The notes beneath the pieces are model-generated. The model was not told the DNA's origin. It was given only the letters and a program-made list of their open reading frames with translations, and made no database searches. Positions 1,172 to 41,161 of a stretch of 64,000 nt of DNA are shown here, piece after piece. The position numbers and the translations under genes are program-made. Positions within the stretch are counted from its first letter, which is position 1. Every line of letters begins with the position of its first letter. The stretch covers positions 1 to 64,000 of the IMG/VR virus record IMGVR_UViG_3300017763_000002; one strand, 5' to 3'.

Positions 1172-1250
1172 TTGCTTCTCGAAAAGCTTTACAAGCTCGA
1201 AAAACGAGTGTTTTAAATACTTTCATAACTTGTTCGAACAAATGCAGCTC

Positions 1251-1289
1251 GCCCCCATCCTTATTGCTAGGGTGGGGGCTTTGTTGTTG
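1251..1289 (+). terminator. intrinsic terminator
   Basis: GCCCCCATCCT-7nt loop-AGGGTGGGGGC stem (one G-U pair) followed by TTTGTTGTT. Confidence 0.7.
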
Positions 1290-1356
1290 GTAGTCAAGGC
1301 TTTGTGAAATTTTCACCCTGCCGGATTTTTGCAAATCCTTGCCGGACAACGACTTA
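1280..1356. repeat. 77-bp double-dyad element, copy A
   Basis: Two YAA-N4-TTG-N5-CAA-N4-TTR dyads start at 1280 and 1332 (52 bp apart) around a 27-bp A-tract/GC core. Confidence 0.75.
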
Positions 1357-2934: not shown

Positions 2935-2962
2935 TTGACACGCTCGGTCTATATGTTATTAT
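2935..2962 (+). promoter_or_regulatory. sigma70-type early promoter (leaderless)
   Basis: A-tract, then TTGACA-16nt-TATTAT with TG extension; ATG 2969 is 6 nt downstream. Confidence 0.8.
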
Positions 2963-2968
2963 ATAGAT

Positions 2969-3385
2969 ATGATTAGAACAAAACCAGACTCTCGCTACGA
3001 CATCGACTATGACCGAAAGGTGTTCGTATACAAAAACCTTCATAAGAATTGCTGGAGCGTTCGCCAGGACGGATTAGTCAAGGCTCATTCGGATGGATCT
3101 CCAATTTCTATATATTCAGCAACAATGAAGGTGAACCAAAAAGGTCGTGAGCGTGTGATTCGTGAAAAGAGCAAGAATGTTCATGCCGGTGTCTCAGGCT
3201 ATCTTCGCTTTTACCTAGACACTGTGTGGCACGGATGGGTTGACATGGTCGAGATAACATACAATCCTTACAAGTATGAGTCTTTTGTACATGTCCAAAA
3301 CAAAAAGCCAAGATGGTTTGCCAGTATTTGCAAACTTTATCAAGATAAAGTTCTAGTTGAGGCTATTCGGGGCTTGACAGATTAA
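2969..3385 (+). CDS. conserved phage hypothetical protein, 138 aa
   Basis: VYKNLHKNCWSVR...GRERVIREKSKNVHA, a motif I recall from a widespread uncharacterised phage family. Confidence 0.75.
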   Translation: MIRTKPDSRYDIDYDRKVFVYKNLHKNCWSVRQDGLVKAHSDGSPISIYSATMKVNQKGRERVIREKSKNVHAGVSGYLRFYLDTVWHGWVDMVEITYNPYKYESFVHVQNKKPRWFASICKLYQDKVLVEAIRGLTD

Positions 3386-5346: not shown

Positions 5347-5420
5347 GCTTTATTTTTTAAAACAAAGGCTAAAAGTATTTTTTCTCTTTCTGTGAGTTGT
5401 GTTTTATTAATCTTAATCAT
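5343..5420 (-). CDS. 25-aa micropeptide, LTEREKIL family copy 1 (not in ORF track)
   Basis: MIKINKTQLTEREKILLAFVLKNKA; own leaderless promoter; paralog at 7442-7507. Confidence 0.65.
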   Translation of the reverse strand: MIKINKTQLTEREKILLAFVLKNKA

Positions 5421-5426
5421 ACATAC

Positions 5427-5455
5427 AATGTAGCACATAAAACCTCAAAAGTCAA
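5427..5455 (-). promoter_or_regulatory. sigma70-type early promoter (leaderless)
   Basis: TTGACT-17nt-TACATT; ATG 5420 is 6 nt downstream. Confidence 0.75.
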
Positions 5456-5468
5456 GAAAAACTTTAAA

Positions 5469-5537
5469 CTATTTTATTGCACAATCCTTTTTTTGACGGG
5501 GTATTTTTTTTGCAAACCCTTGCCAGTCAATGATTTA
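5469..5537. repeat. half element (one dyad) plus 29-bp repeat
   Basis: CTATTTTATTGCACAATCCTTTTTTTGAC at 5469-5497 is identical to 6641-6669; dyad CAAACCCTTG-CCAGT-CAATGATTTA at 5513-5537. Confidence 0.75.
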
Positions 5538-8087: not shown

Positions 8088-8384
8088 TTAGGATTCAAAG
8101 ATGTCACGCATTGCACCGCTTACGCAATTCATATCTGTTAGATTTTCGTCACTATCAAAGTCATCGTCTTCTTCTGCTTCGACTGCATCGAGAGATTCAA
8201 ACTCTCCTTCGATATCACGCTCGGATGCGTGTTGTATGCCATGCTCAAGAGTAAACTCCTCGTTTGCGATTTCTTCCTCAAGGTCATTGAGTAAGTCAGC
8301 AAACTTGCCTGTGAGTTTGTTGTTGTTCTCATTGGCGAGTTCAACGGCTTTAGCGATTAGAGAGATATTATTATCATTGTTCAT
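8088..8384 (-). CDS. very acidic hypothetical protein, 98 aa (start refined from 8420)
   Basis: D/E-rich (EAEEDDDFDSDE); the start fits the promoter at 8393-8420. Confidence 0.7.
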   Translation of the reverse strand: MNNDNNISLIAKAVELANENNNKLTGKFADLLNDLEEEIANEEFTLEHGIQHASERDIEGEFESLDAVEAEEDDDFDSDENLTDMNCVSGAMRDIFES

Positions 8385-8392
8385 AGTTATGT

Positions 8393-8420
8393 ATATTATA
8401 TTATATTGAAGTAATTGCAA
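8393..8420 (-). promoter_or_regulatory. sigma70-type early promoter (near-leaderless)
   Basis: TTGCAA-16nt-TAATAT; ATG 8384 is 8 nt downstream. Confidence 0.65.
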
Positions 8421-8433
8421 GAAAAAAGTGCGA

Positions 8434-8547
8434 TTATGCGAAAGTTTTTTTATGCTTTGCCTTGCGTGGAAGCATCTTATTCTTTAGCTTGTGAGGTCTT
8501 GCCTTAGTGAAGACCATCGGTATTCTAACTTTAATTTTCTTATTCAT
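8434..8547 (-). CDS. 37-aa very basic peptide (not in ORF track)
   Basis: MNKKIKVRIPMVFTKARPHKLKNKMLPRKAKHKKTFA; own leaderless promoter. Confidence 0.6.
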   Translation of the reverse strand: MNKKIKVRIPMVFTKARPHKLKNKMLPRKAKHKKTFA

Positions 8548-8553
8548 AGATAC

Positions 8554-8582
8554 AATCTATCAAACAAATGCCTAAAAGTCAA
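8554..8582 (-). promoter_or_regulatory. sigma70-type early promoter (leaderless)
   Basis: TTGACT-17nt-TAGATT; ATG 8547 is 6 nt downstream. Confidence 0.8.
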
Positions 8583-8613
8583 CAAAAACATTCAACTGTT
8601 TTACTGCACTATA

Positions 8614-8638
8614 CCCCCACCCCCGGTGACCCTACCCC
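8614..8638 (-). other. putative G-quadruplex motif at the early/late boundary
   Basis: The minus strand reads GGGG-TA-GGG-TCACC-GGGGG-T-GGGGG, four G-runs with short loops in an AT-rich genome. Confidence 0.6.
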
Positions 8639-8754
8639 TTTTGTGAATTAGAATCTCTAAACAGATCAGAAAATCCGGCGGGGGGTGGTATTTTTCAATA
8701 TCGAAAACAAAATTAAAATTATACAAATTAGCTTGGCCCAAAAAAATCCACGGG

Positions 8755-8759
8755 GTGTA
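8755..8759 (+). promoter_or_regulatory. GTGTA late-type promoter motif
   Basis: GTGTA-9nt-ATG 8769. Confidence 0.6.
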
Positions 8760-8768
8760 TTTACATAC

Positions 8769-9023
8769 ATGCCCGACGAACAAGACATGATATGGCTAAA
8801 AGGAATGCAATTAAAATTAAAAGGATGCGAGGCTAAAAACAGCGATATGAAATTTTTAATTAAATTAATGCAAGACGAATTAAACAAAACAAAACAATAC
8901 ATTCATTCAGAATGCCGCCGACCTGACTTTGAGTATTCAAAGCACGTTGACATGGCATTGTCGTGGACACCTAGAAAAAGAAAAAGAATAGTTACTCAAA
9001 TAAAAAATGAAATTAAAACGTAA
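8769..9023 (+). CDS. hypothetical protein, 84 aa (start refined from 8685)
   Basis: MPDEQDMIWLKG...; start placed by the GTGTA motif; overlaps the next gene. Confidence 0.55.
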   Translation: MPDEQDMIWLKGMQLKLKGCEAKNSDMKFLIKLMQDELNKTKQYIHSECRRPDFEYSKHVDMALSWTPRKRKRIVTQIKNEIKT

Positions 9024-9816
9024 AATATTGATTATGGGGTTGCCCGGTGCAGGTAAGACCTCTCTCGCTGAACTTTTAGTGCCTGCCTTAGGCGCTGTAT
9101 GGTTTAACGCTGACGCAATTCGTCAGGAAATACATAAAGATCTTGGATTTTCTGAGGAAGATAGAATAGAACACGCTCGTAGATTGGGAAAATTAAGTGA
9201 CTGGGCTGCCATGGGGGGTAACTTTGTGGTTTCAGATTTTTGCTGCCCAACAAAAGAAACTCGAGAAGTTTTTGAAGCTGATTTTACCATATGGGTGGAC
9301 AGGATTATGGAGGGCCGTTACGAAGATACAAACAAAATGTTTGAACGCCCTATGAATTACGACATTAGACTAACAGACGGCAGTCCAGAAGAATGGCTCG
9401 GAAAGGTTCTTAAAAAAATATACGAAACTGAAAAATGGGACAATCAAGCTCCGACAGCGCTTTTAATTGGAAGATACCAACCGTTTCACATTGGGCATAA
9501 AACGCTGGTTAATGAGGCTATTAAAAGAGTCGGTCAATGCTGTATTGCACTAAGAGATGTTGCAGGTACAGACGAAAGCAATCCTTATGATTTTGAAAAA
9601 GTTAAACTTGAAATCGAGAAAGCTTGCCTTGAGTTCGGAGATAAAATAAAAGTCGTTGAGCTTCCAAATATCACAGACGTATTTTATGGAAGGGGCGTAG
9701 GATATAATATCGAACAACTTGAACTTAGTAAAGAAATGCAGGATGTTTCAGCAACAAAGATTAGATCGGGACAAATTGGCCAAGACGGCAAACCTACTGG
9801 CAAGAGACCTGAGTAG
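9007..9816 (+). CDS. cysC: adenylylsulfate (APS) kinase fused to a HIGH-motif nucleotidyltransferase domain
   Basis: P-loop GLPGAGKT and DAIR...DLGFSEEDRIEHARR as in CysC; C-terminal IGRYQPFHIGH and VSATKIRS of the cytidylyltransferase/NMNAT-like fold. Confidence 0.85.
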   Translation: MKLKRKILIMGLPGAGKTSLAELLVPALGAVWFNADAIRQEIHKDLGFSEEDRIEHARRLGKLSDWAAMGGNFVVSDFCCPTKETREVFEADFTIWVDRIMEGRYEDTNKMFERPMNYDIRLTDGSPEEWLGKVLKKIYETEKWDNQAPTALLIGRYQPFHIGHKTLVNEAIKRVGQCCIALRDVAGTDESNPYDFEKVKLEIEKACLEFGDKIKVVELPNITDVFYGRGVGYNIEQLELSKEMQDVSATKIRSGQIGQDGKPTGKRPE

Positions 9817-9893
9817 TTTTGTCCCATTTTGGGCTGTAAGCCCTTTATTATTCATGTGTTTAATTGGCATAAAGATTGCAATACTATGTTTAT

Positions 9894-10265
9894 ATGAAAA
9901 ATTCACTAATAACTAACTTCTTGGGCGAGCCCAGCTTGCTCAGCGCGATGGATTCAATTATTGATTACAGTGTTGACTCCTATAAATATAGAACAACTCT
10001 AGAAAAAAAAGACAATGGGTATATCGTAACCGCTCAAGTTCCTGGAATGTCAAAAGAAGACATCTCTATTAAATTAGAAGATTCCGTGCTCAAAATAACT
10101 GGAGAAAAACAAGTTAATGAAAGCATGACTACATCTATTAATAAAGACTTCACTATAAGTAGTAGTATTAATACAAGCAAAATCGAAGCTAAGGTTGAAA
10201 ATGGTATACTTAACGTTTTTATTCCTCAAAAAGAAAATAAATCAAAAAAAATTCCAATTAATTGA
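9894..10265 (+). CDS. small heat shock protein (Hsp20/alpha-crystallin), start refined from 9876
   Basis: AQVPGMSKEDISIKLEDSVLKITGEK and IEAKVENGILNVFIP. Confidence 0.9.
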   Translation: MKNSLITNFLGEPSLLSAMDSIIDYSVDSYKYRTTLEKKDNGYIVTAQVPGMSKEDISIKLEDSVLKITGEKQVNESMTTSINKDFTISSSINTSKIEAKVENGILNVFIPQKENKSKKIPIN

Positions 10266-10398
10266 TCCAAGTATAGTTCTAGATCGTTATCTATCTCACT
10301 ATGCTATCTAATAAACAATGTTTGAATCTGGCCAAATTTATGGTTTCTGTAATTTTTACTGCAATCAGCTCAATGGTAACCTATTTGAATTCAATGGT

Positions 10399-11007
10399 TT
10401 AATCGTTTTTGTACATTAACGATTGATATTCAACCATAATTTCTCGATAACCATGCTTTTTTAGATAAGGAATACTGTAAGTACTCTTAGAATCTCCCTC
10501 TGGAGTGTGAACGTCGTCGTGAAGAATAAGCGATTCTTTAGAAAGTAAATCATTTTCTAAAGCGTACTTAACATCTTTCAAGTGTTCAAGGCAAGCTTCT
10601 TCTCCACTTTCTAGATGATCCATATATAACAAGTCAATCTGATTTGGTTTTGGAAGAGATTCAAGAAAAACTTCTGCTGTAGATTCATACAGAATAACAT
10701 TAGGATTATTTTCGCACATTTTTCTAGCAACAAATATTGCTTCAGGCAAAGGATCCACAGAATATATTGTGGCTTGAGGTAAATTGTCCGCAAAAACCTT
10801 AGTAAAGCATCCCGCGCCCCAGTCCCAAACTGAGGGATCTTCATCGTAATGCTCGATGTCGGTGGTAAATATTTGCTGTCTAAATGATCTCGTAGTCCCA
10901 AGTTCAACAATATTTAATTCCCCACGCGTATCCAATATTTCTTTGCATAATTCGAATGTCTTCTTAAATGTATTTCGTCTTCTTCCCAGAAACTCTTCGT
11001 ATTTCAT
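10399..11007 (-). CDS. class I SAM-dependent methyltransferase (Methyltransf_24-like)
   Basis: IVELGTTR, YSVDP, IDLLYMDH and LILHDD motifs. Confidence 0.7.
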   Translation of the reverse strand: MKYEEFLGRRRNTFKKTFELCKEILDTRGELNIVELGTTRSFRQQIFTTDIEHYDEDPSVWDWGAGCFTKVFADNLPQATIYSVDPLPEAIFVARKMCENNPNVILYESTAEVFLESLPKPNQIDLLYMDHLESGEEACLEHLKDVKYALENDLLSKESLILHDDVHTPEGDSKSTYSIPYLKKHGYREIMVEYQSLMYKND

Positions 11008-11009
11008 AA

Positions 11010-11591
11010 TTATTTTTTGTAGATTTGACCTATTCCTGTGTTTCTTGGGGTTTCCCAGGTTTCGCCATAAGGGTCACAAGCTTTTTTAACACCTGGGCAC
11101 TTATGAAAACCATAATCATGAGTCAATATCTTGCCTCCAGGAACTACTTTATCATAAAAATGATTTAAGCAAGCTTTAGTGGGTATATAATGATCTAAGT
11201 CTAACCATAAAACAGCAATATTATTTACGTTAACTGATTGTATTGTATTTTCATCTATAAACATTGGGTATGTTCGCGGCACTTTAATATTGTTTTTTGT
11301 AAAATTATCTATCCATTTATCCAGCCCTCCAGCGTTGAACTCTCCTGCAAAGCATGGGTTTTCACACATATCTTCTTCTGCTGGTGGCGCTAAACCTTCA
11401 AACGAATCAATAGCGTGGTATTCTCGTTCTGGAGAAGTTAAAGTCATTGACATTACATCTCCTCCTAAATATGTGCCAGCAATAACAACATTACCTTGAG
11501 GAGCGAAAGCAACAGTATTAATTAGATGATTGATTTCATATACAGTAAGAGCAGTATATTCTTTAATTTGATTATATATATTGTTTGTCAT
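11010..11591 (-). CDS. TylF/MycF-like sugar O-methyltransferase (start refined from 11624)
   Basis: GNVVIAGTYLGG, IDSFEGL, LWLDLDHYIPTK and PGGKILTHDYG motifs; ATGA overlap with the upstream gene. Confidence 0.8.
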   Translation of the reverse strand: MTNNIYNQIKEYTALTVYEINHLINTVAFAPQGNVVIAGTYLGGDVMSMTLTSPEREYHAIDSFEGLAPPAEEDMCENPCFAGEFNAGGLDKWIDNFTKNNIKVPRTYPMFIDENTIQSVNVNNIAVLWLDLDHYIPTKACLNHFYDKVVPGGKILTHDYGFHKCPGVKKACDPYGETWETPRNTGIGQIYKK

Positions 11592-12397
11592 AATTTTTCT
11601 ATAAAAATTCCTATTGAAGTGCATGTAAACCCTTCGAATGATAACTTTAGGTGTGGGTCTTGAGTATAAGGGGGTACATCTATGTATCCATCATAAACTA
11701 AATCGCCTGAAGAAAAATCCATTTCACAAGCTTTATATCCCATTTGATTTGCAGTGTTTATTAATCTTTCAATATCCTGGCGGCGGTATATACAGGTTGA
11801 TGGATGTTCTAAAGTTTCTTGATTTGATGAAACGTTGTACTCTGTTGTATGTACAGCTATACCTCCTTTTTTTAAAGTTTTCATGCTATTAAGTATAAAA
11901 TCTATACCTTTCTGTAATGATCCTAAATGCTCTAGACTACATGCACTCCAATTAAAGTCAAAACTATCATTAAATTCATCTTGTATATTATTCATATCTA
12001 TACATCTATATTGTACATAATTATAAAAAGTGTCTCTATCGCAGAACTTTGGCAGCCATTTCTCAAAGGAGCTCAATGAATCAGAGTGTTGATCTGTGGC
12101 TATCCACCCACTTTTCTCGGCGGCTTCTTTATCCTGATCACTAGCAACTATATCCACTCCCTCAGTAGCTAATGCAGGAACTAAATATTCTTCTCCACAT
12201 CCAAACCCCAACCCTTTCTTACCAGGCTTCAGCATTCCCTTTTGTTCTAATACATTATATATCCATATCATCTCCCATACTTTACGATGATAATATACTT
12301 CTTGATCAAACTTATTTCTATTTATTCTTACAGAAGATACTGAATCTAAATGTGACTGCTTACATAAACTACCAATTAAATCAATATTTTTATTCAT
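11588..12397 (-). CDS. class I SAM-dependent methyltransferase
   Basis: KGLGFGCGEE, VASD, SFDFNWSACSLEHLG and LKKGGIAVHTTEY motifs. Confidence 0.8.
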   Translation of the reverse strand: MNKNIDLIGSLCKQSHLDSVSSVRINRNKFDQEVYYHRKVWEMIWIYNVLEQKGMLKPGKKGLGFGCGEEYLVPALATEGVDIVASDQDKEAAEKSGWIATDQHSDSLSSFEKWLPKFCDRDTFYNYVQYRCIDMNNIQDEFNDSFDFNWSACSLEHLGSLQKGIDFILNSMKTLKKGGIAVHTTEYNVSSNQETLEHPSTCIYRRQDIERLINTANQMGYKACEMDFSSGDLVYDGYIDVPPYTQDPHLKLSFEGFTCTSIGIFIEKL

Positions 12398-18189: not shown

Positions 18190-18726
18190 ATGAAAATTTT
18201 AGGCAAAAACGGTTATGTTAGAGATGTTACGGACGCTGATGTTTTAGAGCTTTCGGCTCATCCACGAGACGTAGACCAAAGGCATTCTCAGTATTTAGGC
18301 TGGGAAAATTACCACGAGCACATAATTAATACTTTTCATTCTTCTAAGCGGAGTTTAGCCTTTTGTTTCAGCGATGGAACTTTAGTCGGATGTACAGGAG
18401 TGCACGACTCCCCACACGCCCGAGTCGGAGGCGTCTGGGCATTAGGAACTAAAAACTCTTTAGATATTCTAGACTTCAAAGGCAGCTTAAAAAAAAGTTA
18501 TGGCAATTTAAAGTCTATTTTAGGTGTTTATGAATTTATGAAAATATCCAGGGAGCATTTCGATTGGCTTTTCGGAGAAGATTTTGATGTTTTGTTAAAC
18601 ATTGTTGAAAAAAATAACAAATTAGGACAGAGATGGTTGCGTTTTTTGGGAGCAGAAATCACGCCTAAAGACGACCGCTTTTGTCAAGTAACATTTTATA
18701 AAAATGGGCGGCGGAGTACATATTGA
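18190..18726 (+). CDS. GNAT-fold protein similar to T7 gp13/DUF2833
   Basis: LLNIVEKNNKLGQRWLRFLGAEI matches the N.V...N....RWL..LG.F pattern; GTGTA at 18164. Confidence 0.55.
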   Translation: MKILGKNGYVRDVTDADVLELSAHPRDVDQRHSQYLGWENYHEHIINTFHSSKRSLAFCFSDGTLVGCTGVHDSPHARVGGVWALGTKNSLDILDFKGSLKKSYGNLKSILGVYEFMKISREHFDWLFGEDFDVLLNIVEKNNKLGQRWLRFLGAEITPKDDRFCQVTFYKNGRRSTY

Positions 18727-21700
18727 TTTTAATCTAGATTTCTTATCTGCAGATCCTACATCCAACTCTGCCAAAAGAACATTATTCGGACACTCCAGGG
18801 CTGCCATGCCAGGAGCAATGCCGACATGGTACGGCCGTTTCAGGCAGTATGCGGTTTACGAAGTTGGGCATTTAGTTTTGCACGCGGATGACGCTGATGA
18901 TTTCTTGGCAAGAAATGAGAGGTCAGCGCCTTCTTTATCTAATTTATATGTATGCGTAAATACTAATAGAGCCGGAGATTTTCCGCCTCCTTCCTCAACC
19001 TCATGGAGATCATTGGCGGATTTGTCTAATGATTATGATACCGGAGCAAGATCAGTTCCTAGGGCTACTTTTTTAACTTCAGGAAGAATGTCTGATAATG
19101 AAATATGTTTAAATTTATTTGAATTTATTGATTTAAATTTTGTAATTTGTAATTCTACTTTCACCCCACTAAATAGCGGTTTAGACCCTATTGCTATTAA
19201 GCCTAGGGTTGGAGCCTCATTTGGAGGAGGGGTTACAAGGACTAGAAGAGAAGTGGATTTAAATTCATCGCAAGGCGGAAACTTAGAAAGGTTTACCGTG
19301 GATTATCCAGAGTATGCTATTTCGGGCACAGGGCAGATTCCCTTGCCTAGTAGAAAATTTGGTTTTGCGGCAACTTCTTTAAATGCACAAATGGGTTCAG
19401 AAATTGAAGCTCTTAATCCAACGAATGACCCGCTAGATCCAGATTTGACTGCAAATTCTTTTGACTCTTCTGTGGTTTATGAAGTTGGAAGCGTAGTGAA
19501 TTATTTTCCAATAGCTGATAATCAAAGCTTAGAGTCTGAAGTTTTTGATACGACTAACCACCCAAAGCTATCTGTGTGTATTAAAAATCTAGAATCTCCA
19601 GCAAGAGATCAAAACGGAACTTATGATACAAGCAAGCTCCCCTGGAATCAAAATTCGACTTACTGGAGGTCATATACATCTGCGGCGAACCGACCAAATT
19701 CATCATTAAGTTCTGTTTATGAATATTTAGTTAATAAAAAAAATAGATTTCCTGCATTTACAGTTAATCCTGACCCGGTAAAAAATCTATCTAACCAAAC
19801 AGTTATCAGGAATAAATCTAGAATTCGTATGAATGATTTTGGTGGCACCTCAAATATTTATGGGCACTTTTTTGTGCATTGGGCTACCGCATTACAACCT
19901 TATAGCAGGAGTAAATGCAGAACCTGGTACTCTGGGGCGTCATCGCAATCTGGCCCACATCAAGATGGGCAATATGATATTTTTATATATACTAAAAATT
20001 TGAAAAAAGACCACGGCGGCCAACCCAGGTTAGCTGTAACTTTCGGAAAAACTACTGCTATTAAATTTTTATCTGTTAGCGGAGTCTCTACATTTTCTAC
20101 AGGCACTATAAGTTCAAATACAATAAATAAATATTTAAAAGATGATAATTTTAACTCGTCAATGATTCAAGAGGTTAGTTCTGAGGCAGATATAATGCAT
20201 TATCAATATAGTAATCTCGTTCCCTCTTACTACATGGGAAGAGGTTACGTTCATGCAAGAAGAAGGGGCGGAGTTCATCCTGGCTCTAGCAAGGGCGATC
20301 GAAATTTAGGTAAATTTATATTGTTTATCGAAGATTTATTGTCTCGCCAAAGAATTGAAATGGTAACTCCTCAAATATTTTCTAATGGGAATCCCAGGCT
20401 TGGTCTTCATGGCCACTCAATTCCAACTCAAGACTGGGGAGAAACTGGGGCCACAAGAAATTATCAATATACAAAAGAAATTGTAGATGGCGGGGGTTTA
20501 ACAGATTTATTATCCACAAAAACAACTGCCACGACAGCGGCACAACCAATGCATTACTTAATAGTAGGCAACGCTTTAAGCGCAACAGACCAAGTAGCGA
20601 ATCAAGGAATAAGCTTTCAAAATCGTTTCGTAGATAGGGCTTTCAGGCCAATTATGCTGAGGACTGATGCGTTAAGCGAAGAAAGATTTTTTCATATACT
20701 TGGCTTGATGCAAACTGGATTCGTCGGGGTTGACGCCGAACTTTTTAAAAATATTACGGACCAAAATATCGACAACTTATCTGGTATAGAGAACAAAATA
20801 TGGATGGATCTTGGGGAGACGTTCCATGGCTCCCAAGGGAACCCTTTATTTAAATCAATCGCCTCTAAAATAGGCTCTTTTAAAGAAAACACACTTACGA
20901 ATCTAAACGATTTAGCTAGCTGGAGTTCATCTTCACAGTACTCTCCGCAGCAAATCACTAAAATTACCCATTCAGATTATTGGACTGCAGGAGGTGACCA
21001 GGGGAGTGCTAATTTTGTCGGACCTTGGTATTATGATGTGCAATATAATTCTGGGAGCGTTGTTTATTTGTGGCAAGACGGACAAAAAACTTATTATACC
21101 GCAGCAGCGAGTTCTAAGTCTGTTTCTCCAAAAGAATTTTTTACTTTTTACAGGGCGTCAGTGGCAAACTCAAATAAAACTCCTATCTACAATTCCAGTA
21201 TCTGGAAAAGAGTGTCAATACCTAAGGGTAATATCGGTTTCCTTAAAGGTTTTGTTTCGACTATAAACCCTTATACTTCATTGCAAGTTTTAGCTAATTC
21301 TAACCTATGGCCTCCAAGCGGAAGGCGCGCATCTAAAATTGGATTTGGCTGGAAGAGGACTTTATCTGAAGAGGGAATATTAAATCAAATCACAGAAAGC
21401 AATCAAGAGTCATATTTATCAAGCTGGACTGAAGGCGCAGAATACCAAGCGGGAGATATTATTACCGTGCAATCTGGTCCAATCGTCGCCCTTGCTCCAG
21501 ACGGAGAATACTATACTTACGAACAGTGGGTGTCTCGTTTTAATTTAAGCTCCCAAGAAGAAGAGGAAGTTTCTTTGCTGTTTTCAGAAGCAGAGGCAGT
21601 TAACCCGCTTTATGCTTTTAAGTGCTTAAAAAATACGTCTGAGGCGGATGTCAACGACCCTAAATCTTATGTAGGATTAATTCCTGGTTTTATTCCAAAT

Positions 21701-24700
21701 GAGACTTCGTCTGAAGTTTATTACTTACTGTCAAACCTAGACTCCGAGCAAGATTCAAACGATGTTATTTCAGAAAACATTGTATCTCAAACAATGTGGA
21801 AAGATATTTCAGCAGCTGAATGGAATAACGGTTCAATAACAACCAGTAAACTGGCGCACTATGGCCTGCTCCCTACGGGTCAATTTAATAAAAGAGACGT
21901 TTTCGGCGCAGGAACATATGCTTATGACCTTTCTTTTGAACCTTATTACAAAGTTGGTGATGCAGTTGTAATGAGGCAATCTGGCGTTGATGTATATAGG
22001 CTTAAAATCAAAGCATTTCACTTGATTGATTTTTCTTTAATTCCTGCCAGCTATACTGATGGAGGTAGTCTAGAATCTGCTAGCAGGATAAAACCAGATT
22101 ATTATTATTCTTCAAACATAAATTTAACAGGATCTTCGGTGCAAAACTATAGTTCTACCACCAGCTTCCACGGGCTAATTAGATCTCAGTGGTGGCAGCC
22201 TGTCGCGAAAAGAACAGGGGCTTTAGAAAGGGGATACCCCGATATATACGGAAACACAGGCTCTTACTTCGTGGTTCCAAAAAGCTTTGATTTCCTTCAT
22301 CTAGAAGATGGAATTGCCGAAGTGGCTCAACAAGCCACAGTCGACTCTACTATTAAAGTATACTTTGATGAGGTTAAAACTTTCGACTTGAGGGGTACGC
22401 AATACTACTGGACAAATGAAGTTAAAAATATTAGCTCAAATATGATTAATGCTTTGCCAAGTTATGGAAACGAAACGGAATTAGAGCCAAATTTAGTCGC
22501 AGAGCTTGAGCACCCTTATATTGATTTTGATGTTTTTGGGGCAAGTTGGGATGACGGCGGAACGACATCTCCGAATTTACTACAAACATCCACAACTGGG
22601 CATGAAGCTGTAGAGTATTTTAAAAGCTGGCTATATTCAAGTTTTGACGTTCAGCTAGCCAGAGACTTTGGAGAGCCTAAAGGTAGCAGCGTGAACCTTG
22701 ACGCTATATTGTCAAGTAAGTTTGAATTTGTAAAATACTACAGTTTTTATAATCCCACAGTTACTTTAAAGTATCAAATATGCGACGCATCTAATAATCC
22801 TATTGGTAGCGAAATTGATTATGTTGAAGGGAGTGAAATAGAAATCGAAAAGGGGCAGAGGATAAAATTAATCCCAAAATTAATTAAAGATGATAATAGT
22901 GAAATTAGTACTTTTTCATTGATGTGCAATTCTTTTGCAAAAAATAATACTATTGGACTTTTTCTAAGAACCCCTTTGGATAGCAATTATAAAGAAGTAG
23001 ATTTTTCTTATACTCATGTATCATCTTCTGTATCCGAGCCGCCTATTGATTCTGATGGAATAAGGGTTCCATATTATACGAACAAAGAAATTACTAGTGG
23101 GCAATTGGCTTTTCCCGCGCAAACCGGAGGCGCATATAGCGTTACTGCAGACCAAGCTAAAACCTATGCGAATGGAAATATTGTATCTTATGGGGCAAAA
23201 ACTTATGAATTTTATGTAGATGATGCTGATTGGCAATTTGACGCAGACATTGAAAATAATCCTGAAATAGCTCCAGGCAGATGGCACAGAAGATCCTGGA
23301 AAAATCCAGTGACATTGACCTACGGGGGAATTGCTCCTGAAAATACTCACTATAGAAGTTCTGGAGAATTTTTCCGCACGACAGAACAAGGCGGGGTGCG
23401 GGCTTCGGCGGAAACAATAACCCCCACATTTTCCAGTTCAGCTTTCACCCTAACTACCAACTTGCAAAATCTACTATTCGATTCTGCTATTGCATTTGGA
23501 CCTTATGGTCAAAATCTTTTACTATCTACCATAGATCAAGCTTATGAGGAAGTGGCCATAAAAGAAACTCTATTGAGTAGGTTTTATAAGTCTCAAACAT
23601 TGCACGATCAATACGGAGAAACTGGATCTGCAGAAGAAAAACTATTATCATCCGCACCAAAATGGAGGAACGTTTCAGGGCCAGAAGGCTCAATCACTGA
23701 GAACGAGATTCTTGGAATTGAGTGGTCTGCAAATAATGTTTACGCTCAGGGAGAAATTGTTGAATTTGGAAATAAATTATATATTTCTACCAAAATTAAT
23801 TCGTCTGTAGACCCTGCTTCTGAGCCGTCAGAGTGGAAAATTGTTCAACCTTGGCACCAAGACAACCATTACATTCCCGGGGATTTTGTTTATATATTTG
23901 AAGATGAGCTTGTTTTATCTTCTGATTCTAACGGAAACCCTCTTCCAACCTTAAGAGAAAACATTCAATTAAAAGGCCCTAGCTCAGGAGGAAATAATTC
24001 CTTTATTTATCCTTCTTGGTCAAAACACAAATACTATCATATAGGAGAAAAAGTTATTAAAAATTCAGCAATATACATATGTATCGCTGCAGGTATTGCG
24101 TCAACAGAATTAGAATTTAATCAAACTTTTCAATTAACTGCGGAAGCGGTTCCTGCACATCCTAATTATGGAGGTAAATATGCTTTCTTCGTTTGTGAAA
24201 AAAATATTTCTCCTGGGAGCGGAGGGCATGACCCGAGAAGATTGAACGTTCTAACTTCCATGCACGGAGATGATGACATTTTAATTAGGGCTAGCGATAA
24301 TTTATCTAAAGCTTTTAATCAAAATGACGATATATATTTAGATTTTACATATCAGAACGGGGATGCATTTAAGGTTAGCACAAAAAATATTAGCCTGTCT
24401 TTGTTCGGTTATAATTCTGCATCAAATATAGACGAAAGAGATTTTTTAACTCAAATTAATGCAAAACCAGAAATTGCAGAAGCGCATGCATCAACCTTAT
24501 CTGCGTGGTCTACTGGGTCTGAGGGGGAGGGTTTTATTTCAACTGGAACATTGAATATAAAAATAAAAGTTACTAATCCAAATCCATCAAGCGTAATTGA
24601 TAGAACTTTTACTCCCGCTACGCCACCTTCAGATTCTACCTGTCAAACATTTACTTCATATTCTAACTTGTTATGTAGTAATAAATTTTTCATTAATAAT

Positions 24701-27700
24701 GGAAAATTATATGCTTCTGGTTTAGATAGTGGTGAGTTAGGTTTTATTGGATTAATGGATAATTCAGAATTTCAAAATACGGTGTTAGGTAATAGTACCG
24801 AAGGTTCTCAGCACAGATCGTATAATAAATTTTGGGCGCTGGAAGGAATAGGAACTGATACTGAAAATCATAGGGTAAAGATTTTTGAAAATGGTAGTGG
24901 CGGCATTAGTAGTTCAGACCAAAATGAAACCATATCTAATGATCAATCAACTTTTGTAAATTCTGAAGGAGGAAACACAGTATTTATTTGCGGAGGAAAA
25001 CTTTATGGAATGGGTCACAATCAGGGTTATTCTTTAGGGTTGTGCGCTACTTCATCAAGCACATTTGGATTAGGTAACCGATCTCAAGGCTACAGAAAAG
25101 ACGGTAATGATGATCTTGATAAACAGAGAAAGAGCGAAGCTGTGCAAGACTTTTTTGAAGCATCCTTGCATTTCGATTCAGATTATTATATTAATCTACA
25201 AGTCAATCCTGGCAGCACAATCTATAGCCTTGGAGACAGTCAGCAACAATTTAGTACAGATATGAGCACAGATCTTGTTGCGTGGAACCATTTCACTAAA
25301 AAAGGTTTTTATCAATCAATTAATGACGAATGGTCTTTAATAGGATATACTAAAAAAGATGCGAACTTCTGGGGTAGTACGTCAAATCAAATATCCCAAC
25401 TTACAAGCGATTGGTATTTTGTTGAACCTTATAATTCTAGCTCTTGGATATCTCATCCAGGATCAATGGAAGCGACAGCTTTATTTACTCCTAATTATAT
25501 GCCTTCTGATTTTTGGCAGACAGGAGGAATACACGCATACAATTTAGACCAAAAGACACCTGCAGGTAGTTGGGGCGTAATGAATCTAGCAAACCTTGAC
25601 GCTTACTTTGAGTCGAGTATTTTTGAAAGGATGGATAAGCTTATTGAAGACGAAGATTATTTTAATGCCTGGAAGAACAATATGGCTCAATATAAATATG
25701 TTGAAAATTCAAGCGTTTATCATGGAACAGTTGATACATCTTCTGGATCTCAACCTAGGCTGGGCTGGAACGGTATACTCATAAATGAAAATTCTTTAAA
25801 ACGTTTTTATGACATGGGCGACTTCGTGACTTCATCAACATGGATGAGCCAAATGAGGATCGGAAGAACAGTTGCTATTTCTGGTGAAATTGATGGATCT
25901 GATTCGGGCTTTAAGCTGGCTACGTCTCATGAAAATGGAGTTGCTAGCCTAAATCCAGTATCAAGCCCAGATTATAGTTACTATAATAATTCCCAAACTT
26001 ATGGTTATGACGGGAGCATGGGAAAATGGGCTAAGGTATTCACTCATAATAAATCACTTTATATTAACGGCAAACCCTTTTGGGATCCAGTGCTGGGAGA
26101 ATCAGAGCACATCGTGATTGATACTATAACTGGAGAATATAATGCAGGAAATTCTGGTTCCGATAACCGAGCGACTCCCCTAGGTATTTATAAATTAAAT
26201 TCTGAAAAAAATATTTCGTTCGGGAATTACCCTAGAAATACCAGGCTAGAATCAGATTTACAAATAATTATTCCAAACAATTTAGGAATTAGTAATTTAC
26301 CTGGAGGAAAAAGAAATATTGATGGTCTTGGTAACGCAAGCAAGGAAATTATTCCTGCGAGAACATATGTTCCGTACGCGACTAAATTAACGGACGAAGA
26401 TGTAACTTGGGCTGCGACAAACAAGTATTCTACATTTTACATTAACCCCCAAGGGCAAGTAAAAGCTTTAGGTTCAGTCTGCGCTTGTCCTTTTTATAAA
26501 ATACAAGGATTAAGCGTTCCGCAATCTTTTGAGTTAACTCCTGGCGGAGACTTCGGCGGTTTGATGGGCGTAGAGGGTAACTATTCGTCTCCAGCTGTAT
26601 CTATAAATTCATTTGATGCTTTTGGCTCACTTACAATTACTGCAGATGACGCAAGCCCTGTGTTTAAAAATGATAATTGGGCTTTAATTCTTTCTGCGGC
26701 GGGAACTACCTCTAGTAGTAATTTACAAACTCATGCAGCTGATGTATTTAGTGGAGATGACATTTATTTCGGATCAGATTCTAGCGAATATATATTTAGA
26801 GATCAAATATCCCAGGAAATTATTATTGAATCTCAAATTACTGCGTCTTTATATGGTCAAAATTTGCTAAAAGTTATGTATGATGATAGCAGCTATAAAG
26901 TTGCAGCCAATAGTTGGATGATAAGATTTACAGAGAAAGGGGCGGGATTAAATGGCAGTGATATAGTTTCAGACTTGAGATGGTACGCAACTAGTTACAA
27001 TCATTCTATTTTAGTTAGAGCTGTTTATTTATTAGTATTAAGGAGAGAGGCTGATTCTCTTGGACTCAGTCATTTTTCTGGACAAAACCACTATGGAGTT
27101 AATATGACTCTTTATCAGCTGATTGGAGCATTAATGTTAAGCGAAGAATTTATAAGTAATGATGCTGCTAGTTTAACTAAACGATATGTAATAGATGCTA
27201 ACCCAGAATCTCCGCAGATTTCAAACGATCCCAGGGATTGTTTTCCGGCAATGAAAAAAATGATGAAGATATGGAATCATTATGGAAATACTTCGTTTCA
27301 ATATTGGGATGGAGATTCAAACATGAGCACTTCTCACATGCTGCGGATTTCTAGTGAATACATAGGAGCTATCGTAATTAATAACTGCGAACGAGAAGAA
27401 GTCAACGGTATATATCGCCCGTCAAAAGGATGGGATGATAATGATTTTAATAGTACTGCAGATAGATCTTGGTACGAGCACGCTCATAATCAAGGAGGTA
27501 GGGATGATGATAAAGGTATATACGTAAGCGATAAAAACACTCAATACGGAAAAATCTTAATTTATTGGGATGCTAATCTTGATATTTGGAGAATGCAGTA
27601 CTCTGATTTTTGGCTGCAGGATACTACAGGAGATGGACTCAGGGCTCAAAGATTAATTGGAATGCAAAAACATTATTACAACGCCAATGGAGATTTGGTT

Positions 27701-30700
27701 AGATCCATTAAGAGTAATATCGGAACCCCGCAAGATGTTGATGAATGGTACATCGGCACAGGAGAATGGCTTACATCTACAGAGCCTGAAACTGTTGATG
27801 TATTTAGTCAACCTAATGATTTCATTGATTCAACCAGGGTAATCTATGCGCCACCAGAAAACTCATTTATTAATAATCTCCATGGGCCTACCAGAATGTC
27901 TATTGTGCCTAAGCTACTAAATAAAACTCCAGGATCTGCGGATCCAGATGCAATTTTCGACAACATGAATTACGCTCAACAATTCAATAATTTTGGATCT
28001 CAAATTCCTGATCGAAACGGCGGGCCTAGCGCTTTCGTTAACGATGATTTATACCAACTGGACCAACAGATTTATCGCTTAGTAAAAAGGTTTACTGATG
28101 ATGGCCGAGCATTTTCTCCAGTTCATTTTGCAGATAGATTTGCATCAAGGACTAGGCCTGGGGGGTTAGAAGCTCTAAGGCCTGATAATAACGAAGTTTA
28201 TCCACGCATCGGTGCGGGGCTTGATTGGAATTTGTGGCCAGAAGATGTAGATTTTGTAAACGAATTTTCTCTTAATGAACAAGCTATAGGTGATCTACTG
28301 CACTTTCAAGGCGGAGCGCTAAAAGAAACTTTAATATATACTTCTTTAGATACAAAAGCCGACGCAAATATTACTAACGATGGATTAGATCTATGGCGAT
28401 TAAATTTAACACAAAATTCCAATATAACTTTTAAATCTAAAATATTAAAAAATTCTGGAAATTTTAGTGATCCTTCAAAAGTAAAATTTGGAATGTATAT
28501 ATTTAAGGACATGGGTTATGGTTACGTTAATGTTGCTGATTTTCAGATGCAGTGGCCCAATAATGGGCTGCCTAGTGGAGGTTATGGCGAATGGGCTCCT
28601 GTGAACACATATATAACACCTGATAGGTATTCTACTTTTATTGGCGGTGGAGAAACCGCAGCGCTAGCTGACTATTCAGATTTATTTACCGATCAATACT
28701 CTCTAGTAAAAGCTTTTTTTGCAAGATATTATAGGCCTGATAATTATGTATATTCCGACGCAGATCCTAATTACAATGCAACTGGGACCAGTGGGTCACT
28801 ATGGACGATTAATGGAGATATAATAACAAATCGCGGCTTGAATTGGACTCAGATGATCGACGTCCGAACTACTCTGAGAAACGCAGATGATCATTTTTTC
28901 GATAGGGTTATGAGTAGAAGTTTTGAAAACAGACCTATATTTCCAGGAGTGTCAGCTAACAGTTTTAACATGGGAACGCAAAATCCTTCTGGTGGATCGT
29001 ACGTAAGTCTTGATGCAAATAGTTTTGTAGATAACGAGCTAGTTTTAGATGTTAGCATTAACAACGCAGCCGCTGGAGGATATTATGTTTTACTTGTAGC
29101 TGAACATGCTTTTGATGCACCTGTACAAGATTTGCAATTAATTCAATCACAATACAATATTAATACAACTGCTGTGGCTACTTCAGGAACTTCAGAGCCA
29201 ATGTTTGTTAGCGAAGCAACAACCGAACATATCAACGGACAAGATGCTGAAACTAATGAACCTATAACTAATGGAGATACCCAGGCATTCACTAAAGATC
29301 CTTTGAAATATATAGCGAGAAATTCTTGGAGTTATAACGATTATAGTGCCTTTGTTAGTATGCTGGACGTTTACGATTGGCACGCAGACTTAACAGATTG
29401 GCAGTACTATTTTGATACTCAAGAAGCAGGCCTAGAGCAAGCTTTGAGAGATCGTCCCAGCAGGTTAAATATGAACCAAGCTAATCTTGGCCTGGCGCAT
29501 TGGAATAGTACTCTTAGTCTCGAGGACCGAAAAAAAAGATCAGAGCACATAAGGGGCTTGTTTGAGAAAAGGTTTAGCGCTAAAGCTACTTACTTTAGAG
29601 GTTTTGAGTCGATGAATCATAATGCAGATTGGGTTTACGATGAAATATTTGGATGGTCTACAAAAGCAATAGGAACTCATTCTCCTGCTAATAATGGCGT
29701 TTCTAACATTTATACAAGCTCTGCTGGATATTATTTTAGTAGTAGATATAATAATTGGTTTGAATTATCTAGTGCAGATAAAACAAAAAGAGATAATGGA
29801 GAGGCATTTGCTGTTAAATTTCTTAATCATGATTTTAATTTTAATTTATTTATTGAAGGGCAATCTGAATTTAATTTAGTATGGCCAGAGTCAAATTCTG
29901 CGACCTTTACTTATTTTGGTGCAAACGGACAAATGAACACTACTACAGGATTACGAAAGCCAGTAAGTAATACATATTCTCAATTAGATCAATATTCATA
30001 CAATACAGGTGATGTTGCAAAAATTGAATTAGCAGAAGGTAATGATCTCTTTAGGACTTTATATTTTGTGTCATTAAAAGATAATAACACTTCTTCATTA
30101 GGTTTCCTGGACAGTTTAGTTCAAGACGAAATCAAGGAGATGAATATTCCCGCGAGAAAAGGATTGTGCCAGAGATATGCTGTAGAGACTCATACGCTGT
30201 CTAGCGACTCCAGCTTGTCTGGGCCAATAACTATTTACAATCCAGCAGATTACAGCAACGACAAAGCTGTAAGGGTGGATATGGGTGAGTCTCACGCAAT
30301 AATTCTCACAGAGTCAGGAAAAGCGTACGGGGTTGGAGATAATTCCCAAAAACAAATAGACAAAATTTTTGAAAGATCAGATCAATTTAGCGGCGTCAAC
30401 CAAGACTCAGCTTTTGGTCCCAGTGATTATGATAATTGCTTATATCTCGTAGCAAATAAATCTAATCCAATTAGCCCTTATTTATCAAGAAGTGATTGGG
30501 ATGCAATCGAAAAGCCTGCGTTTCCTCTGGAGCGTTGGAAATACGGTCAGTCTTATAGTAGTGGAGAGAAAGTTTTCATTAAAAACGAAACATATAGTGC
30601 TATTTCAGCAGATGATTATGAAGTTTCAGAATCAAAGAAATCAAATGTTTTATTAAATGGCTTTTCTGGGTCTCCTTATTTAATCGACCATGAAAGATTT

Positions 30701-40780: not shown

Positions 40781-41161
40781 ATGCTATATAATTATTGTAA
40801 ATGCTGCGGCGCTAAAAATTATTACGCTTTATCACCGCCTCAGTTTTGCTCCAACTGCGGGAGCTCATTTGGGGCTAATTCGGTTGCAAGTGAAGCTCAA
40901 GTCAAAAAATCTGAAGTAGCTTCTAAAAAAACAACAAGAGTGCGTAGGAGAAGGTTGCATGATGAACCTGAAGAAGATGGTTTGGATATAGACTCTATTC
41001 CAAAGGTAAGCAAATTAAAATATAATACCTCTCAGGGAGGAATCGGGGGCAGAGTTATGTCCTTGGAATCTCTTTTGCCTGAGCCGGAGAAAGAAAATAT
41101 TGAAAAAACCAAAACAGCAAAACCCAAAAGAAAAAGAGGAAGACCAAGAAAAGAAAAGTAA
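40781..41161 (+). CDS. zinc-ribbon protein with basic tail
   Basis: CKCCG...PQFCSNCG; C-terminal KRKRGRPRK (AT-hook-like GRP). Confidence 0.75.
   Translation: MLYNYCKCCGAKNYYALSPPQFCSNCGSSFGANSVASEAQVKKSEVASKKTTRVRRRRLHDEPEEDGLDIDSIPKVSKLKYNTSQGGIGGRVMSLESLLPEPEKENIEKTKTAKPKRKRGRPRKEK

What the first reader, a model, noticed from the sequence alone, without database searches (positions are those of the whole stretch)
8600..8768. G-quadruplex-like, GC-run-rich boundary where the promoter class switches
Seen in sequence: the minus strand has GGGG-TA-GGG-TCACC-GGGGG-T-GGGGG (8614-8638); the plus strand has CCGGCGGGGGTGG near 8676 and CCACGGGG near 8748. These lie in a noncoding, otherwise AT-rich gap, exactly where leftward sigma70 early genes diverge from rightward GTGTA-driven genes. 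Inference: a packaging (pac/terminus) site, terminal-repeat boundary or replication origin, possibly structure-based.
Basis: partly seen in the sequence, partly recalled or inferred. Interest (0 to 1): 0.6.

Follow-up and report, generated by a model that had tools for sequence, protein, structure and literature searches.

The report
Conserved phage intergenic control module
The G/C-run cluster is this phage's copy of a single-copy, about 165-base non-coding module shared by many uncultured marine large phages; it most likely controls or insulates transcription at the edge of the early-gene array, and I found no sign that it is a genome end or packaging site.

Summary
The runs are at the stated coordinates. 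The minus-strand motif at 8614-8638 is the only canonical G-quadruplex motif in the 204,906-bp genome. Within-genome statistics are weak: 10% of simulated genomes hold one such motif, and 20% reach the same run density. The feature is real because it is conserved.

Four blocks align without indels in 23 diverse marine phage sequences: a C-run with a T-run (8629-8649), a G-run followed by TGGTATTTTTCAATAT (8675-8702), an A-rich stretch, and an A-run with a GC block (8730-8754). A sequence model finds exactly one copy in each of five complete relatives. No copy of the module turned up in about 185,000 bacterial and archaeal genomes.

The module usually lies between leftward leaderless early-gene cassettes and a rightward gene whose identity varies. 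Mosaic homology breaks at its edges.

G-quadruplex potential is in 2 of 24 members. No RNA structure, covariation or open reading frame is conserved. There is no terminal repeat, the element's position in contigs varies, and GC-skew extremes lie elsewhere.

Best reading (about 0.4): a composite transcription-control and insulator cassette that also marks a recombination junction, closest to the PeSL cassettes of T4-type phages. A replication origin is not excluded (about 0.15).

The parts
8434..8547 (-). 37-aa basic peptide ORF, the first gene of the leftward early array. Its ATG lies 6 nt after the -10 hexamer, the leaderless layout.
   Evidence: Translation. Promoter-to-ATG spacing. A homologous start is seen in L089/L090. 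RNA-library contigs reach 8532.
8554..8582 (-). Leftward sigma70-type promoter: TTGACT, 17 nt, TAGATT, preceded by TG.
   Evidence: Consensus scan. It belongs to the genome-wide set of 40 TTGAC(A/T)-N16-18-TAnnnT sites, 23 of which have an ATG 6-7 nt downstream.
8530..8612 (.). One copy of a repeated early-promoter cassette, with a second copy at 5407-5488. The cassette is multi-copy in relatives.
   Evidence: L109 holds at least six copies within 8.5 kb, and L002 and L214 hold several.
8611..8626 (+). Block b1: two C5 runs, complementary to block b3. It is variable among relatives: C-rich, G-rich or absent.
   Evidence: Inverted repeat 8617-8624 / 8681-8688. Duplex energy b1:b3 is -21.2 kcal/mol against a control mean of -9.5, reached by 0.7% of controls.
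8614..8638 (-). Canonical G-quadruplex motif (four G3+ runs with loops of 2, 5 and 1 nt), formed by b1 plus the C-run of b2.
   Evidence: Only such motif in the genome. Present in 2 of 24 family members.
8629..8649 (+). Block b2: ACCCTACCCC followed by TTTTGTGAATT.
   Evidence: Conserved block with pairwise identity 0.64, against 0.32 for the spacers. Homology with the closest relative starts exactly at 8629.
8650..8674 (.). Spacer of fixed length and free sequence between b2 and b3.
   Evidence: No indels in 23 sequences; identity 0.32.
8675..8702 (+). Block b3: CCGGC, G6, then TGGTATTTTTCAATATC. This is the most conserved part of the module.
   Evidence: Pairwise identity 0.88; 18 invariant columns in A3. 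Diverged versions were found by the model in G003 and G004.
8703..8729 (+). A-rich stretch (GC 0.11) of fixed length between b3 and b4.
8730..8754 (+). Block b4: a -35-like GCTTGG/GCTTGAC, an A7-9 run, then a GC-rich segment ending in GGGG.
   Evidence: A129-A134 are invariant in A2. GCTTGAC is a 13-fold enriched upstream 7-mer in this genome.
8755..8771 (+). GTGTA-N9-ATG: the phage-specific promoter-like motif at its usual fixed distance from a start codon.
   Evidence: GTGTA is 10-fold enriched upstream of ORFs and 4-fold depleted genome-wide; 14 of 39 sites have exactly this spacing.
8769..9023 (+). 84-aa ORF of unknown function, the first rightward gene. Relatives have a PhoH-like gene, methyltransferases, a glycosyltransferase or a lectin-like gene in this position.
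   Evidence: No Pfam hit. Neighbourhood comparison.

Best explanation
The G/C runs belong to a conserved, single-copy, fixed-geometry non-coding module of about 165 bp, made of blocks b2, b3, an A-rich stretch and b4, with a variable block b1 in front. It caps the array of small early-gene cassettes and lies directly in front of the next gene module. In most members the early genes run leftward, away from it.

I read it as a composite transcription-control cassette that works at the DNA level. GC tracts, each followed by a T or A tract, are set about 50 bp apart. An AT-rich stretch and a promoter follow; in this window the promoter is the GTGTA-N9-ATG start of the 84-aa ORF. On this reading the GC/T-tract units act as an insulator or attenuator, or as binding sites for a conserved factor, keeping the early array and the neighbouring module transcriptionally separate.

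Because the module is conserved while both flanks are swapped, it also serves as a recombination linker at a mosaic junction.

Shown: conservation, copy number, geometry, gene context, mosaic breakpoints, and absence of coding or conserved RNA structure. Inferred: the insulator or factor-binding role and the linker role. The G-quadruplex motif in this genome is a by-product of b1 and b2 both being C-rich here.
For: - Conservation without indels across 23 sequences, with identity 0.88 (b3), 0.64 (b2) and 0.63 (b4) against 0.32 in the spacers.
- One significant model hit in each of five complete relatives, including two where a search allowing 3 mismatches had failed.
- Only chance matches to the 20-nt b3 core, in unrelated contexts and without the other blocks, in about 185,000 bacterial and archaeal genomes.
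- The element sits between shuffled small early genes and a right-hand gene that differs between relatives: an 84-aa ORF, PhoH, FkbM methyltransferases, a GT25 glycosyltransferase or a LamG-like protein.
- Homology with the closest relative breaks at 8539 and resumes exactly at 8629.
- The adjoining early-promoter cassette is multi-copy.
- b4 carries the -35-like GCTTGAC motif typical of this genome's promoters, and the GTGTA start follows it.
[quoted passage not shown] They sit at plastic regions and mediate modular shuffling (PMC2839356, PMC4122927).
- In relatives of the L098 type, b1 and b2 form exactly such a G-run/loop/C-run hairpin, at -15 to -23 kcal/mol with 0 of about 300 controls as stable.
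Against: - No function was measured.
- The module is single-copy, whereas PeSLs are multi-copy.
- In this window there is no compact hairpin, and the terminator scan found none.
- Fold energies of the b1-b3 segment are no better than dinucleotide shuffles (median z -0.3).
- The b2:b3 helix shows no covariation.
- b3 read as an extended -10 promoter scores below all 25 training promoters.
- A near-invariant 20-nt core is more conservation than a simple terminator or GC clamp needs, so a specific unknown factor or another function such as an origin may be involved.
- In L167 and L186 the flanking genes converge on the element, so a promoter role cannot be universal.
Confidence: 0.4

Rival explanations
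1. Replication origin. The A-rich 27-bp stretch (GC 0.11), bracketed by GC blocks with T/A tracts, would be an unwinding element. The G-rich motif copies (b3 forward; b2 and b1 reversed) would be initiator sites. The divergent promoters would provide transcriptional activation.
For: Single copy in every complete genome. Fixed geometry and strong block conservation independent of the flanking genes. An AT-rich core between GC-rich blocks. Location between divergent promoters.
Against: Cumulative GC skew has its minimum at 159,087 and maximum at 86,602, with no inflection at 8.6 kb, although skew here largely follows gene strand. The DnaE-type polymerase, clamp-loader/Lon and exonuclease genes lie at 51-63 kb. 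No recognisable initiator gene is adjacent. b1 is absent in about a quarter of members, and b2 loses its C-run in G004.
Confidence: 0.15
2. Cis-acting RNA. A rightward transcript would fold the C-run (b1 or b2) onto the G-run of b3, followed by the U-tract. This would give a long-stem intrinsic terminator or attenuator, or a small RNA.
For: The b3 G-run is always followed by T(A)TTTTT. In 13 of 22 members the minimum-energy fold pairs it with an upstream C-run. b1:b3 or b1:b2 complementarity is far beyond controls in 16 of 22. In G002, L167 and L186 the left-hand genes point towards the element, where a terminator would make sense. The minus-strand fold of 8600-8700 has z -2.8.
Against: No consensus structure. 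No covariation in the b2:b3 helix, with 321 of 500 shuffles as good. Fold energies are not below shuffles (plus strand z -1.5). The loop is about 45-56 nt. G004 and L087 have no C-run partner. No Rfam family matches. No RNA-library contig crosses 8533-8830, though depth was very low and only contigs were available.
Confidence: 0.15
3. Non-B DNA element. A G-quadruplex or i-motif on the b1+b2 strand would act as a supercoil sensor or polymerase barrier between the divergent promoters.
For: It is the only canonical motif in the genome. A G4-aware fold of the isolated minus strand prefers a quadruplex (-19.9 against -3.1 kcal/mol, rough parameters).
Against: A canonical motif is present in 2 of 24 members, and a relaxed one (loops up to 12) in 5. 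The closest relative (L083) has only three runs. In L098-type relatives the runs lie on opposite strands and form a hairpin instead. One such motif per genome arises in 10% of simulated genomes.
Confidence: 0.05
4. Packaging (pac) site, physical terminus or terminal-repeat boundary.
For: Single copy and strongly conserved. Many metagenome contigs end within a few hundred bases of it.
Against: No terminal or long direct repeat. The element's position and orientation relative to contig ends differ in seven complete records. Contig ends near it fall at varying offsets (about 110-220 nt upstream, about 50-590 nt downstream), next to low-complexity T-runs and strain-variable flanks, as expected for assembly-graph branching. 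The terminase is 36 kb away and of the T4-like N-terminal type.
Confidence: 0.03

Closest known systems
PeSL (promoter-early stem-loop) composite promoter-terminator cassettes of T4-type phages (Arbiol et al. 2010, PMC2839356; Comeau et al. 2014, PMC4122927)
   Same: An intergenic element of about 100 bp or more in the early, hyperplastic part of a large lytic phage genome. It combines a sigma70-like promoter, an AT-rich stretch upstream of the -35, and poly-G/poly-C tracts able to pair. It sits at junctions where neighbouring small genes are inserted, deleted or replaced between relatives.
   Different: - The b2-b4 module is single-copy per genome; only the adjoining promoter cassette is repeated.
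- It has three blocks at fixed spacing of about 50 bp, with a near-invariant 20-nt core.
- The compact G-loop-C hairpin exists only in one subgroup of relatives and not in this window.
- The phage is not T4-type: it has a DnaE-type polymerase, its own sigma factors and leaderless genes.
- Terminator and promoter activity are untested here.
   Same: A stretch of about 200 bp between divergent early and late promoters. Phased A/T tracts and repeated sites build a nucleoprotein switch.
   Different: No binding protein is known here. The motifs are unrelated. In some relatives the right-hand promoter is not of the GTGTA class, or the flanking genes converge.
Transcription-activated phage origins (T4 oriF/oriG, the T7 primary origin, lambda ori); from my own knowledge
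   Same: A promoter next to an AT-rich unwinding stretch, repeated motifs, single or few copies, intergenic.
   Different: No skew inflection, no adjacent replication gene, no recognisable iteron array. Not tested experimentally.
Canonical G-quadruplex motifs, such as the mitochondrial CSBII G-run followed by T-rich sequence
   Same: Four G3+ runs with short loops on one strand, plus a separate G-run followed by a T-tract (b3).
   Different: The four-run arrangement is not conserved among relatives. The conserved G-run (b3) is a single run interrupted by one T.

Membership tests
Canonical G-quadruplex-forming sequence | Four runs of at least three G separated by loops of 1-7 nt on one strand | tested here: met
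   Minus strand 8614-8638; the only instance in the genome.
Canonical G-quadruplex-forming sequence | The motif is retained in homologous elements, as expected if the structure is the function | tested here: not met
   2 of 24 members with loops up to 7 nt, 5 of 24 with loops up to 12 nt.
Canonical G-quadruplex-forming sequence | Quadruplex forms in K+ (circular dichroism, polymerase stop) | not testable with these tools
   Only an in-silico fold with rough parameters.
Intrinsic (Rho-independent) terminator | GC-rich hairpin with a short loop, directly followed by a U-tract | tested here: not met
   The scan of 8300-8900 found none. The b1:b3 arms are 56 nt apart. The U-tract after b3 is present.
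Intrinsic (Rho-independent) terminator | Structure more stable than composition predicts, or supported by covariation | tested here: not met
   Median z -0.3 over 22 members. No covariation in b2:b3. No alifold consensus.
PeSL composite promoter-terminator cassette | [quoted passage not shown] | tested here: met
   Leftward TTGACT-17-TAGATT with an AT-rich upstream cassette. b4 has a GCTTGAC-like -35 preceded by the A-rich stretch.
PeSL composite promoter-terminator cassette | Stem-loop built from a poly-G and a poly-C tract | tested here: inconclusive
   Compact G-loop-C hairpin in L098-type relatives. In this window the complementarity is only long-range (b1:b3).
PeSL composite promoter-terminator cassette | Many copies per genome in hyperplastic regions | tested here: not met
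   The b2-b4 module has one copy per genome. The adjoining promoter cassette is repeated.
PeSL composite promoter-terminator cassette | Located at junctions of inserted, deleted or replaced genes between relatives | tested here: met
   Homology breakpoints at 8539/8629; different right-hand genes; shuffled left-hand genes.
PeSL composite promoter-terminator cassette | Measured promoter and terminator activity | not testable with these tools
   Needs reporter assays.
pac/cos site or terminal-repeat boundary | Coincides with physical DNA ends or a direct terminal repeat | tested here: not met
   No end repeat. The element lies at seven different distances from contig ends in complete records.
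pac/cos site or terminal-repeat boundary | Read-start pile-up or coverage step in virion DNA | not testable with these tools
   All 24 runs offered are kept as assembled contigs.
Replication origin | AT-rich unwinding stretch next to repeated motifs | tested here: inconclusive
   8703-8729 has GC 0.11, flanked by GC blocks. There are two or three G-rich motif copies, but b1 is optional and b2 is not always C-rich.
Replication origin | Strand-composition (GC-skew) inflection at the site | tested here: not met
   Minimum at 159,087, maximum at 86,602. Skew here tracks gene strand, so this is weak evidence.
Described RNA family (Rfam 15) | Covariance-model match | tested here: not met
   Nothing at the element at E up to 1, nor in five related loci at gathering scores.
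Sigma70 extended -10 promoter at b3 (TGGTATTTT) | TGnTAnnnT geometry | tested here: met
   8686-8694. These columns are invariant or nearly so.
Sigma70 extended -10 promoter at b3 (TGGTATTTT) | Resembles this phage's own early -10 regions; the key A is retained in relatives | tested here: not met
   Weight-matrix score 1.2 against 3.7-12.0 for 25 training promoters. The A is lost in L214, G003 and G004.

The most novel reading that the evidence does not exclude
The module could be a previously undescribed, unique cis-acting genome element of a broad clade of uncultured marine large phages. Examples would be their replication origin, or a nucleoprotein switch scaffold read by one conserved host or phage factor. 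The near-invariant 20-nt b3 core would then be the recognition site.
Probability: 0.25. Interest if true: 0.65.

Novelty: new variant of a known kind. Interest (0 to 1): 0.45.

Why it matters
These phages of roughly 130-215 kb are known only from marine metagenomes. They have almost no annotated regulation. A single-copy non-coding module that stays fixed in length and keeps a 20-nt core while the proteins around it diverge to about 40% identity gives a concrete handle on how such phages organise early and late expression, or replication. It also marks where their variable host-interaction gene islands (PhoH, Hsp20, sugar- and methyl-transferases) are exchanged. It can further serve as a sequence tag for finding this clade in metagenomes. 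If it proves to be an ordinary promoter/insulator cassette, the finding is modest. If it is an origin or a switch scaffold, it opens an experimental route into an uncultured lineage.

Tried and rejected
- Protein-coding: every one of the six frames has stops in at least 17 of 23 members.
- tRNA or tmRNA: none in the window.
- Rfam: no match at the element.
- Host-derived or attachment-site core: the 20-mer occurs in five bacterial or archaeal contigs, all in unrelated contexts without the other blocks.
- Promoter class: the G-run is not part of the GTGTA promoter motif, since no upstream conservation appears in 39 sites. No second b3-like or b2-like site exists in the genome.
- b3 as an early promoter: low weight-matrix score.
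- Candidate sigma70 sites at 8626-8654 and 8692-8719 from the scan are not conserved in the family.
- Palindromic operator in b3: natural variants show no compensating changes (read).
- Short leader peptide on the minus strand: G-run length varies by one or two without frame compensation.
- NtcA-like (GTA-N8-TAT), CRP-like, DnaA-box, IHF and Pho-box readings were considered by eye only and dropped as inconsistent across members.
- Nucleotide search of cultured phages: no match. Terminase and polymerase have only distant cultured relatives.
- Literature: no hit for the GTGTA motif or the b3 core in a phage context. The 'moraphage' paper (PMC12619734) did not obviously describe this lineage, and I read only its outline.
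- RNA libraries: fragments on both flanks but none across 8533-8830. Depth is too low and only contigs were available, so this is uninformative.

Full report
**What is there**

The window is the first 64 kb of a 204,906-bp IMG/VR virus record, rated 100% complete, linear, with GC 35.8%. The quoted strings are in the sequence:
- On the + strand, 8614-8638 reads C5-A-C5-GGTGA-CCC-TA-CCCC.
- 8675-8688 reads CCGGC-G6-TGG.
- 8748-8755 reads CCACGGGG and runs into GTGTA-N9-ATG of the 84-aa ORF at 8769-9023.

The gap 8548-8768 is non-coding. On its left is a 37-aa basic-peptide ORF on the minus strand (8434-8547). That ORF is driven by TTGACT-17-TAGATT with a TG extension.

**Is it more than chance?**

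The minus-strand string is the only canonical G-quadruplex motif on either strand of the genome, and the region has the highest density of G/C runs. However, 10% of first-order Markov genomes contain at least one such motif, and 20% reach five runs in 160 nt. Composition alone is therefore not convincing. Conservation is what makes the feature real.

**Promoter context**

GTGTA is 10-fold enriched in the 60 nt upstream of ORFs and about 4-fold depleted genome-wide (107 found, about 434 expected). It sits at a fixed GTGTA-N9-ATG distance, or about 20-22 nt upstream when an AAGG-like ribosome site intervenes. It has no conserved -35 and no G-run upstream.

Forty TTGAC(A/T)-N16-18-TAnnnT sites were found, and 23 of them have an ATG 6-7 nt after the hexamer. 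Most early genes therefore look leaderless.

The genome encodes two sigma70-family proteins. One of them plausibly reads GTGTA; this is an inference.

GTGTA starts dominate from 8.7 to 159 kb. Sigma70-type starts dominate from 159 kb through the contig ends to 8.5 kb.

**Relatives**

The neighbouring APS-kinase-like gene has 140 confirmed relatives in viral contigs, 80 of which were fetched. Only the closest (L002) keeps this upstream DNA.

Exact and gapped pattern scans then found the element in other viral contigs and in marine metagenome contigs. Twenty of the 17-mer hits in metagenomes carry the other blocks as well.

The 23 sequences align over 164 nt with essentially no indels (A2). The layout is:
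- b1: variable.
- b2: ACCCTACCCC followed by TTTTGTGAATT.
- A 25-nt spacer of free sequence.
- b3: a G5-7 run followed by TGGTATTTTTCAATAT.
- An A-rich stretch of about 30 nt.
- b4: a -35-like GCTTGAC, an A7-9 run, then TCGGCG-like GC.
- The start of the right-hand gene.

Pairwise identity is 0.88 in b3, 0.64 in b2 and 0.63 in b4, against 0.32 in the spacer.

A sequence-only model (R1) found exactly one significant hit in each of five complete relatives. These include G003 and G004, where a search allowing 3 mismatches had failed.

The 20-nt core occurs in representative bacterial and archaeal genomes only as chance matches in unrelated contexts.

**What it is not**

- It is not coding, and not a tRNA or a known RNA family.
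- No conserved RNA structure was found. RNAalifold finds none on either strand. The only pairing possible in nearly all members, b2 with b3, is 84% paired but shows no covariation. Fold energies of the b1-b3 segment equal those of shuffles, with median z -0.3.
- b1 is complementary to b3 in about nine members, including this window (-21 kcal/mol). It is complementary to b2 in about eight, where it forms a compact G-run/loop/C-run hairpin. It is absent in about six.
- In G004 and L087 the b2 position carries a G-run rather than a C-run.
- The quadruplex motif survives in 2 of 24 members.

What is conserved is therefore a set of duplex GC tracts, each abutting a T or A tract at fixed spacing, plus the b3 core. 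A particular folded strand is not conserved.

**Terminus, packaging and origin**

There is no terminal repeat and no long direct repeat outside genes. In seven complete records the element lies at about 8.7, 114, 152, 24, 17, 182 and 1.8 kb, in both orientations.

Many metagenome contigs end within a few hundred bases of the element, but at different offsets. These ends lie beside low-complexity T-runs and strain-variable flanks, which is the pattern expected from assembly-graph branching.

Cumulative GC skew has its minimum at 159,087 and its maximum at 86,602, and it follows gene strand.

Only assembled contigs of public runs were available, so read starts could not be examined. I laid 5,001 letters, within the limit the operators set.

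RNA-library contigs cover the left genes up to 8532 and the right genes from 8831. None crosses the element, but depth is minimal.

**Context and mosaicism**

In most loci, small early genes run leftward from the element and a rightward gene follows it. That rightward gene may be the 84-aa ORF, a PhoH-like protein, FkbM-type methyltransferases, a GT25 glycosyltransferase or a LamG-like protein.

In G002 the left-hand genes point towards the element. In L167 and L186 both flanks converge on it.

Homology with the closest relative stops at 8539 and resumes exactly at 8629.

The promoter cassette just left of b1 (8530-8612) is a repeat. It has a second copy at 5407-5488 and at least six copies within 8.5 kb of L109.

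**Interpretation**

The closest described system is the PeSL cassette of T4-type phages. A PeSL combines a sigma70-like promoter, an AT-rich upstream region and a poly-G/poly-C stem-loop. PeSLs sit in hyperplastic regions and mediate modular shuffling.

The element shares the composition, the position and the mosaic junctions of a PeSL. It differs in several ways:
- It is single-copy.
- It has three blocks in fixed geometry.
- It lacks a compact hairpin in this genome.
- It belongs to a non-T4 lineage with a DnaE-type polymerase.

I therefore file it as working like a composite control/insulator cassette and recombination linker, with confidence about 0.4. I do not file it as a PeSL family member.

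A replication origin (0.15) and a cis-acting RNA terminator or attenuator (0.15) remain open. A quadruplex-based role (0.05) and a packaging or terminus role (0.03) are unlikely.

The near-invariant 20-nt core of b3 is not explained by any of these readings and suggests a specific, still unknown binding partner.

Noticed in passing
whole genome; e.g. window 2935-2975, 5346-5310, 8582-8545: Most predicted early promoters (TTGAC(A/T)-N17-TAnnnT) are followed by an ATG exactly 6-7 nt after the -10 hexamer (23 of 40). The early genes therefore appear to be leaderless.
   Followed up: partly
whole genome; window examples 13409/13424, 17071/17089, 38093, 40133: GTGTA is a phage-specific promoter-like motif. 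It is 10-fold enriched upstream of ORFs, 4-fold depleted overall, at fixed GTGTA-N9-ATG spacing, with no -35. It often occurs in back-to-back divergent pairs.
   Followed up: yes
window 41100-41909 (+); G000 about 92.3-92.9 kb (-): Two sigma70-family (region 2) proteins are encoded by the phage. They are candidates for reading the GTGTA class.
   Followed up: no
window 18704-36391 (+): A single open reading frame of 5,895 aa. Not analysed.
   Followed up: no
window 5407-5488 and 8530-8612; L109, L002, L214: A repeated early-promoter cassette of about 80 bp, consisting of an AT-rich upstream block, TTGACT, a -10 hexamer and a leaderless ATG. It is multi-copy in relatives and behaves like the PeSL cassettes of T4-type phages.
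   Followed up: partly
L193, L202, L166, L140, L126: about 100-130 nt upstream of b3: In one subgroup of relatives a conserved TGGCAGG-N4-(G/A)TGCC lies just upstream of the G-run hairpin. Its GG and GC are spaced as in sigma54 -24/-12 promoters, and the N4 varies. It could equally be a small GGCA/TGCC hairpin.
   Followed up: no
G000 177,646-177,900 and 181,789-182,250 (outside the window): Tandem and dispersed copies of a repeat of about 69 bp containing ATAAGCCCCCGTTTCTCGTCTTGCG, near what look like tRNA genes.
   Followed up: no
window 9007-12397: Right of the element lies an island of host-interaction-type genes: a fusion of an APS-kinase-like and a cytidylyltransferase-like domain (9007-9816), Hsp20 (9876-10265), and three methyltransferase-like genes on the minus strand (10399-12397).
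   Followed up: partly
window 1247-1290; G000 71,980-72,010; window about 49,830-49,860: Compact GC hairpins followed by T-runs, the ordinary intrinsic-terminator look. One lies directly upstream of a GTGTA start. They show what this phage's usual terminators look like, which is unlike the 8614-8690 arrangement.
   Followed up: no
window 51332-56385 (-): A Lon-like ATP-dependent protease with a clamp-loader-like ATPase region lies next to a DnaE-type DNA polymerase III alpha homologue. There are no close cultured relatives.
   Followed up: no
L099 3004-3158 and 8443-8510: A related phage contig carries two tRNA genes and a tmRNA-like gene fragment match.
   Followed up: no
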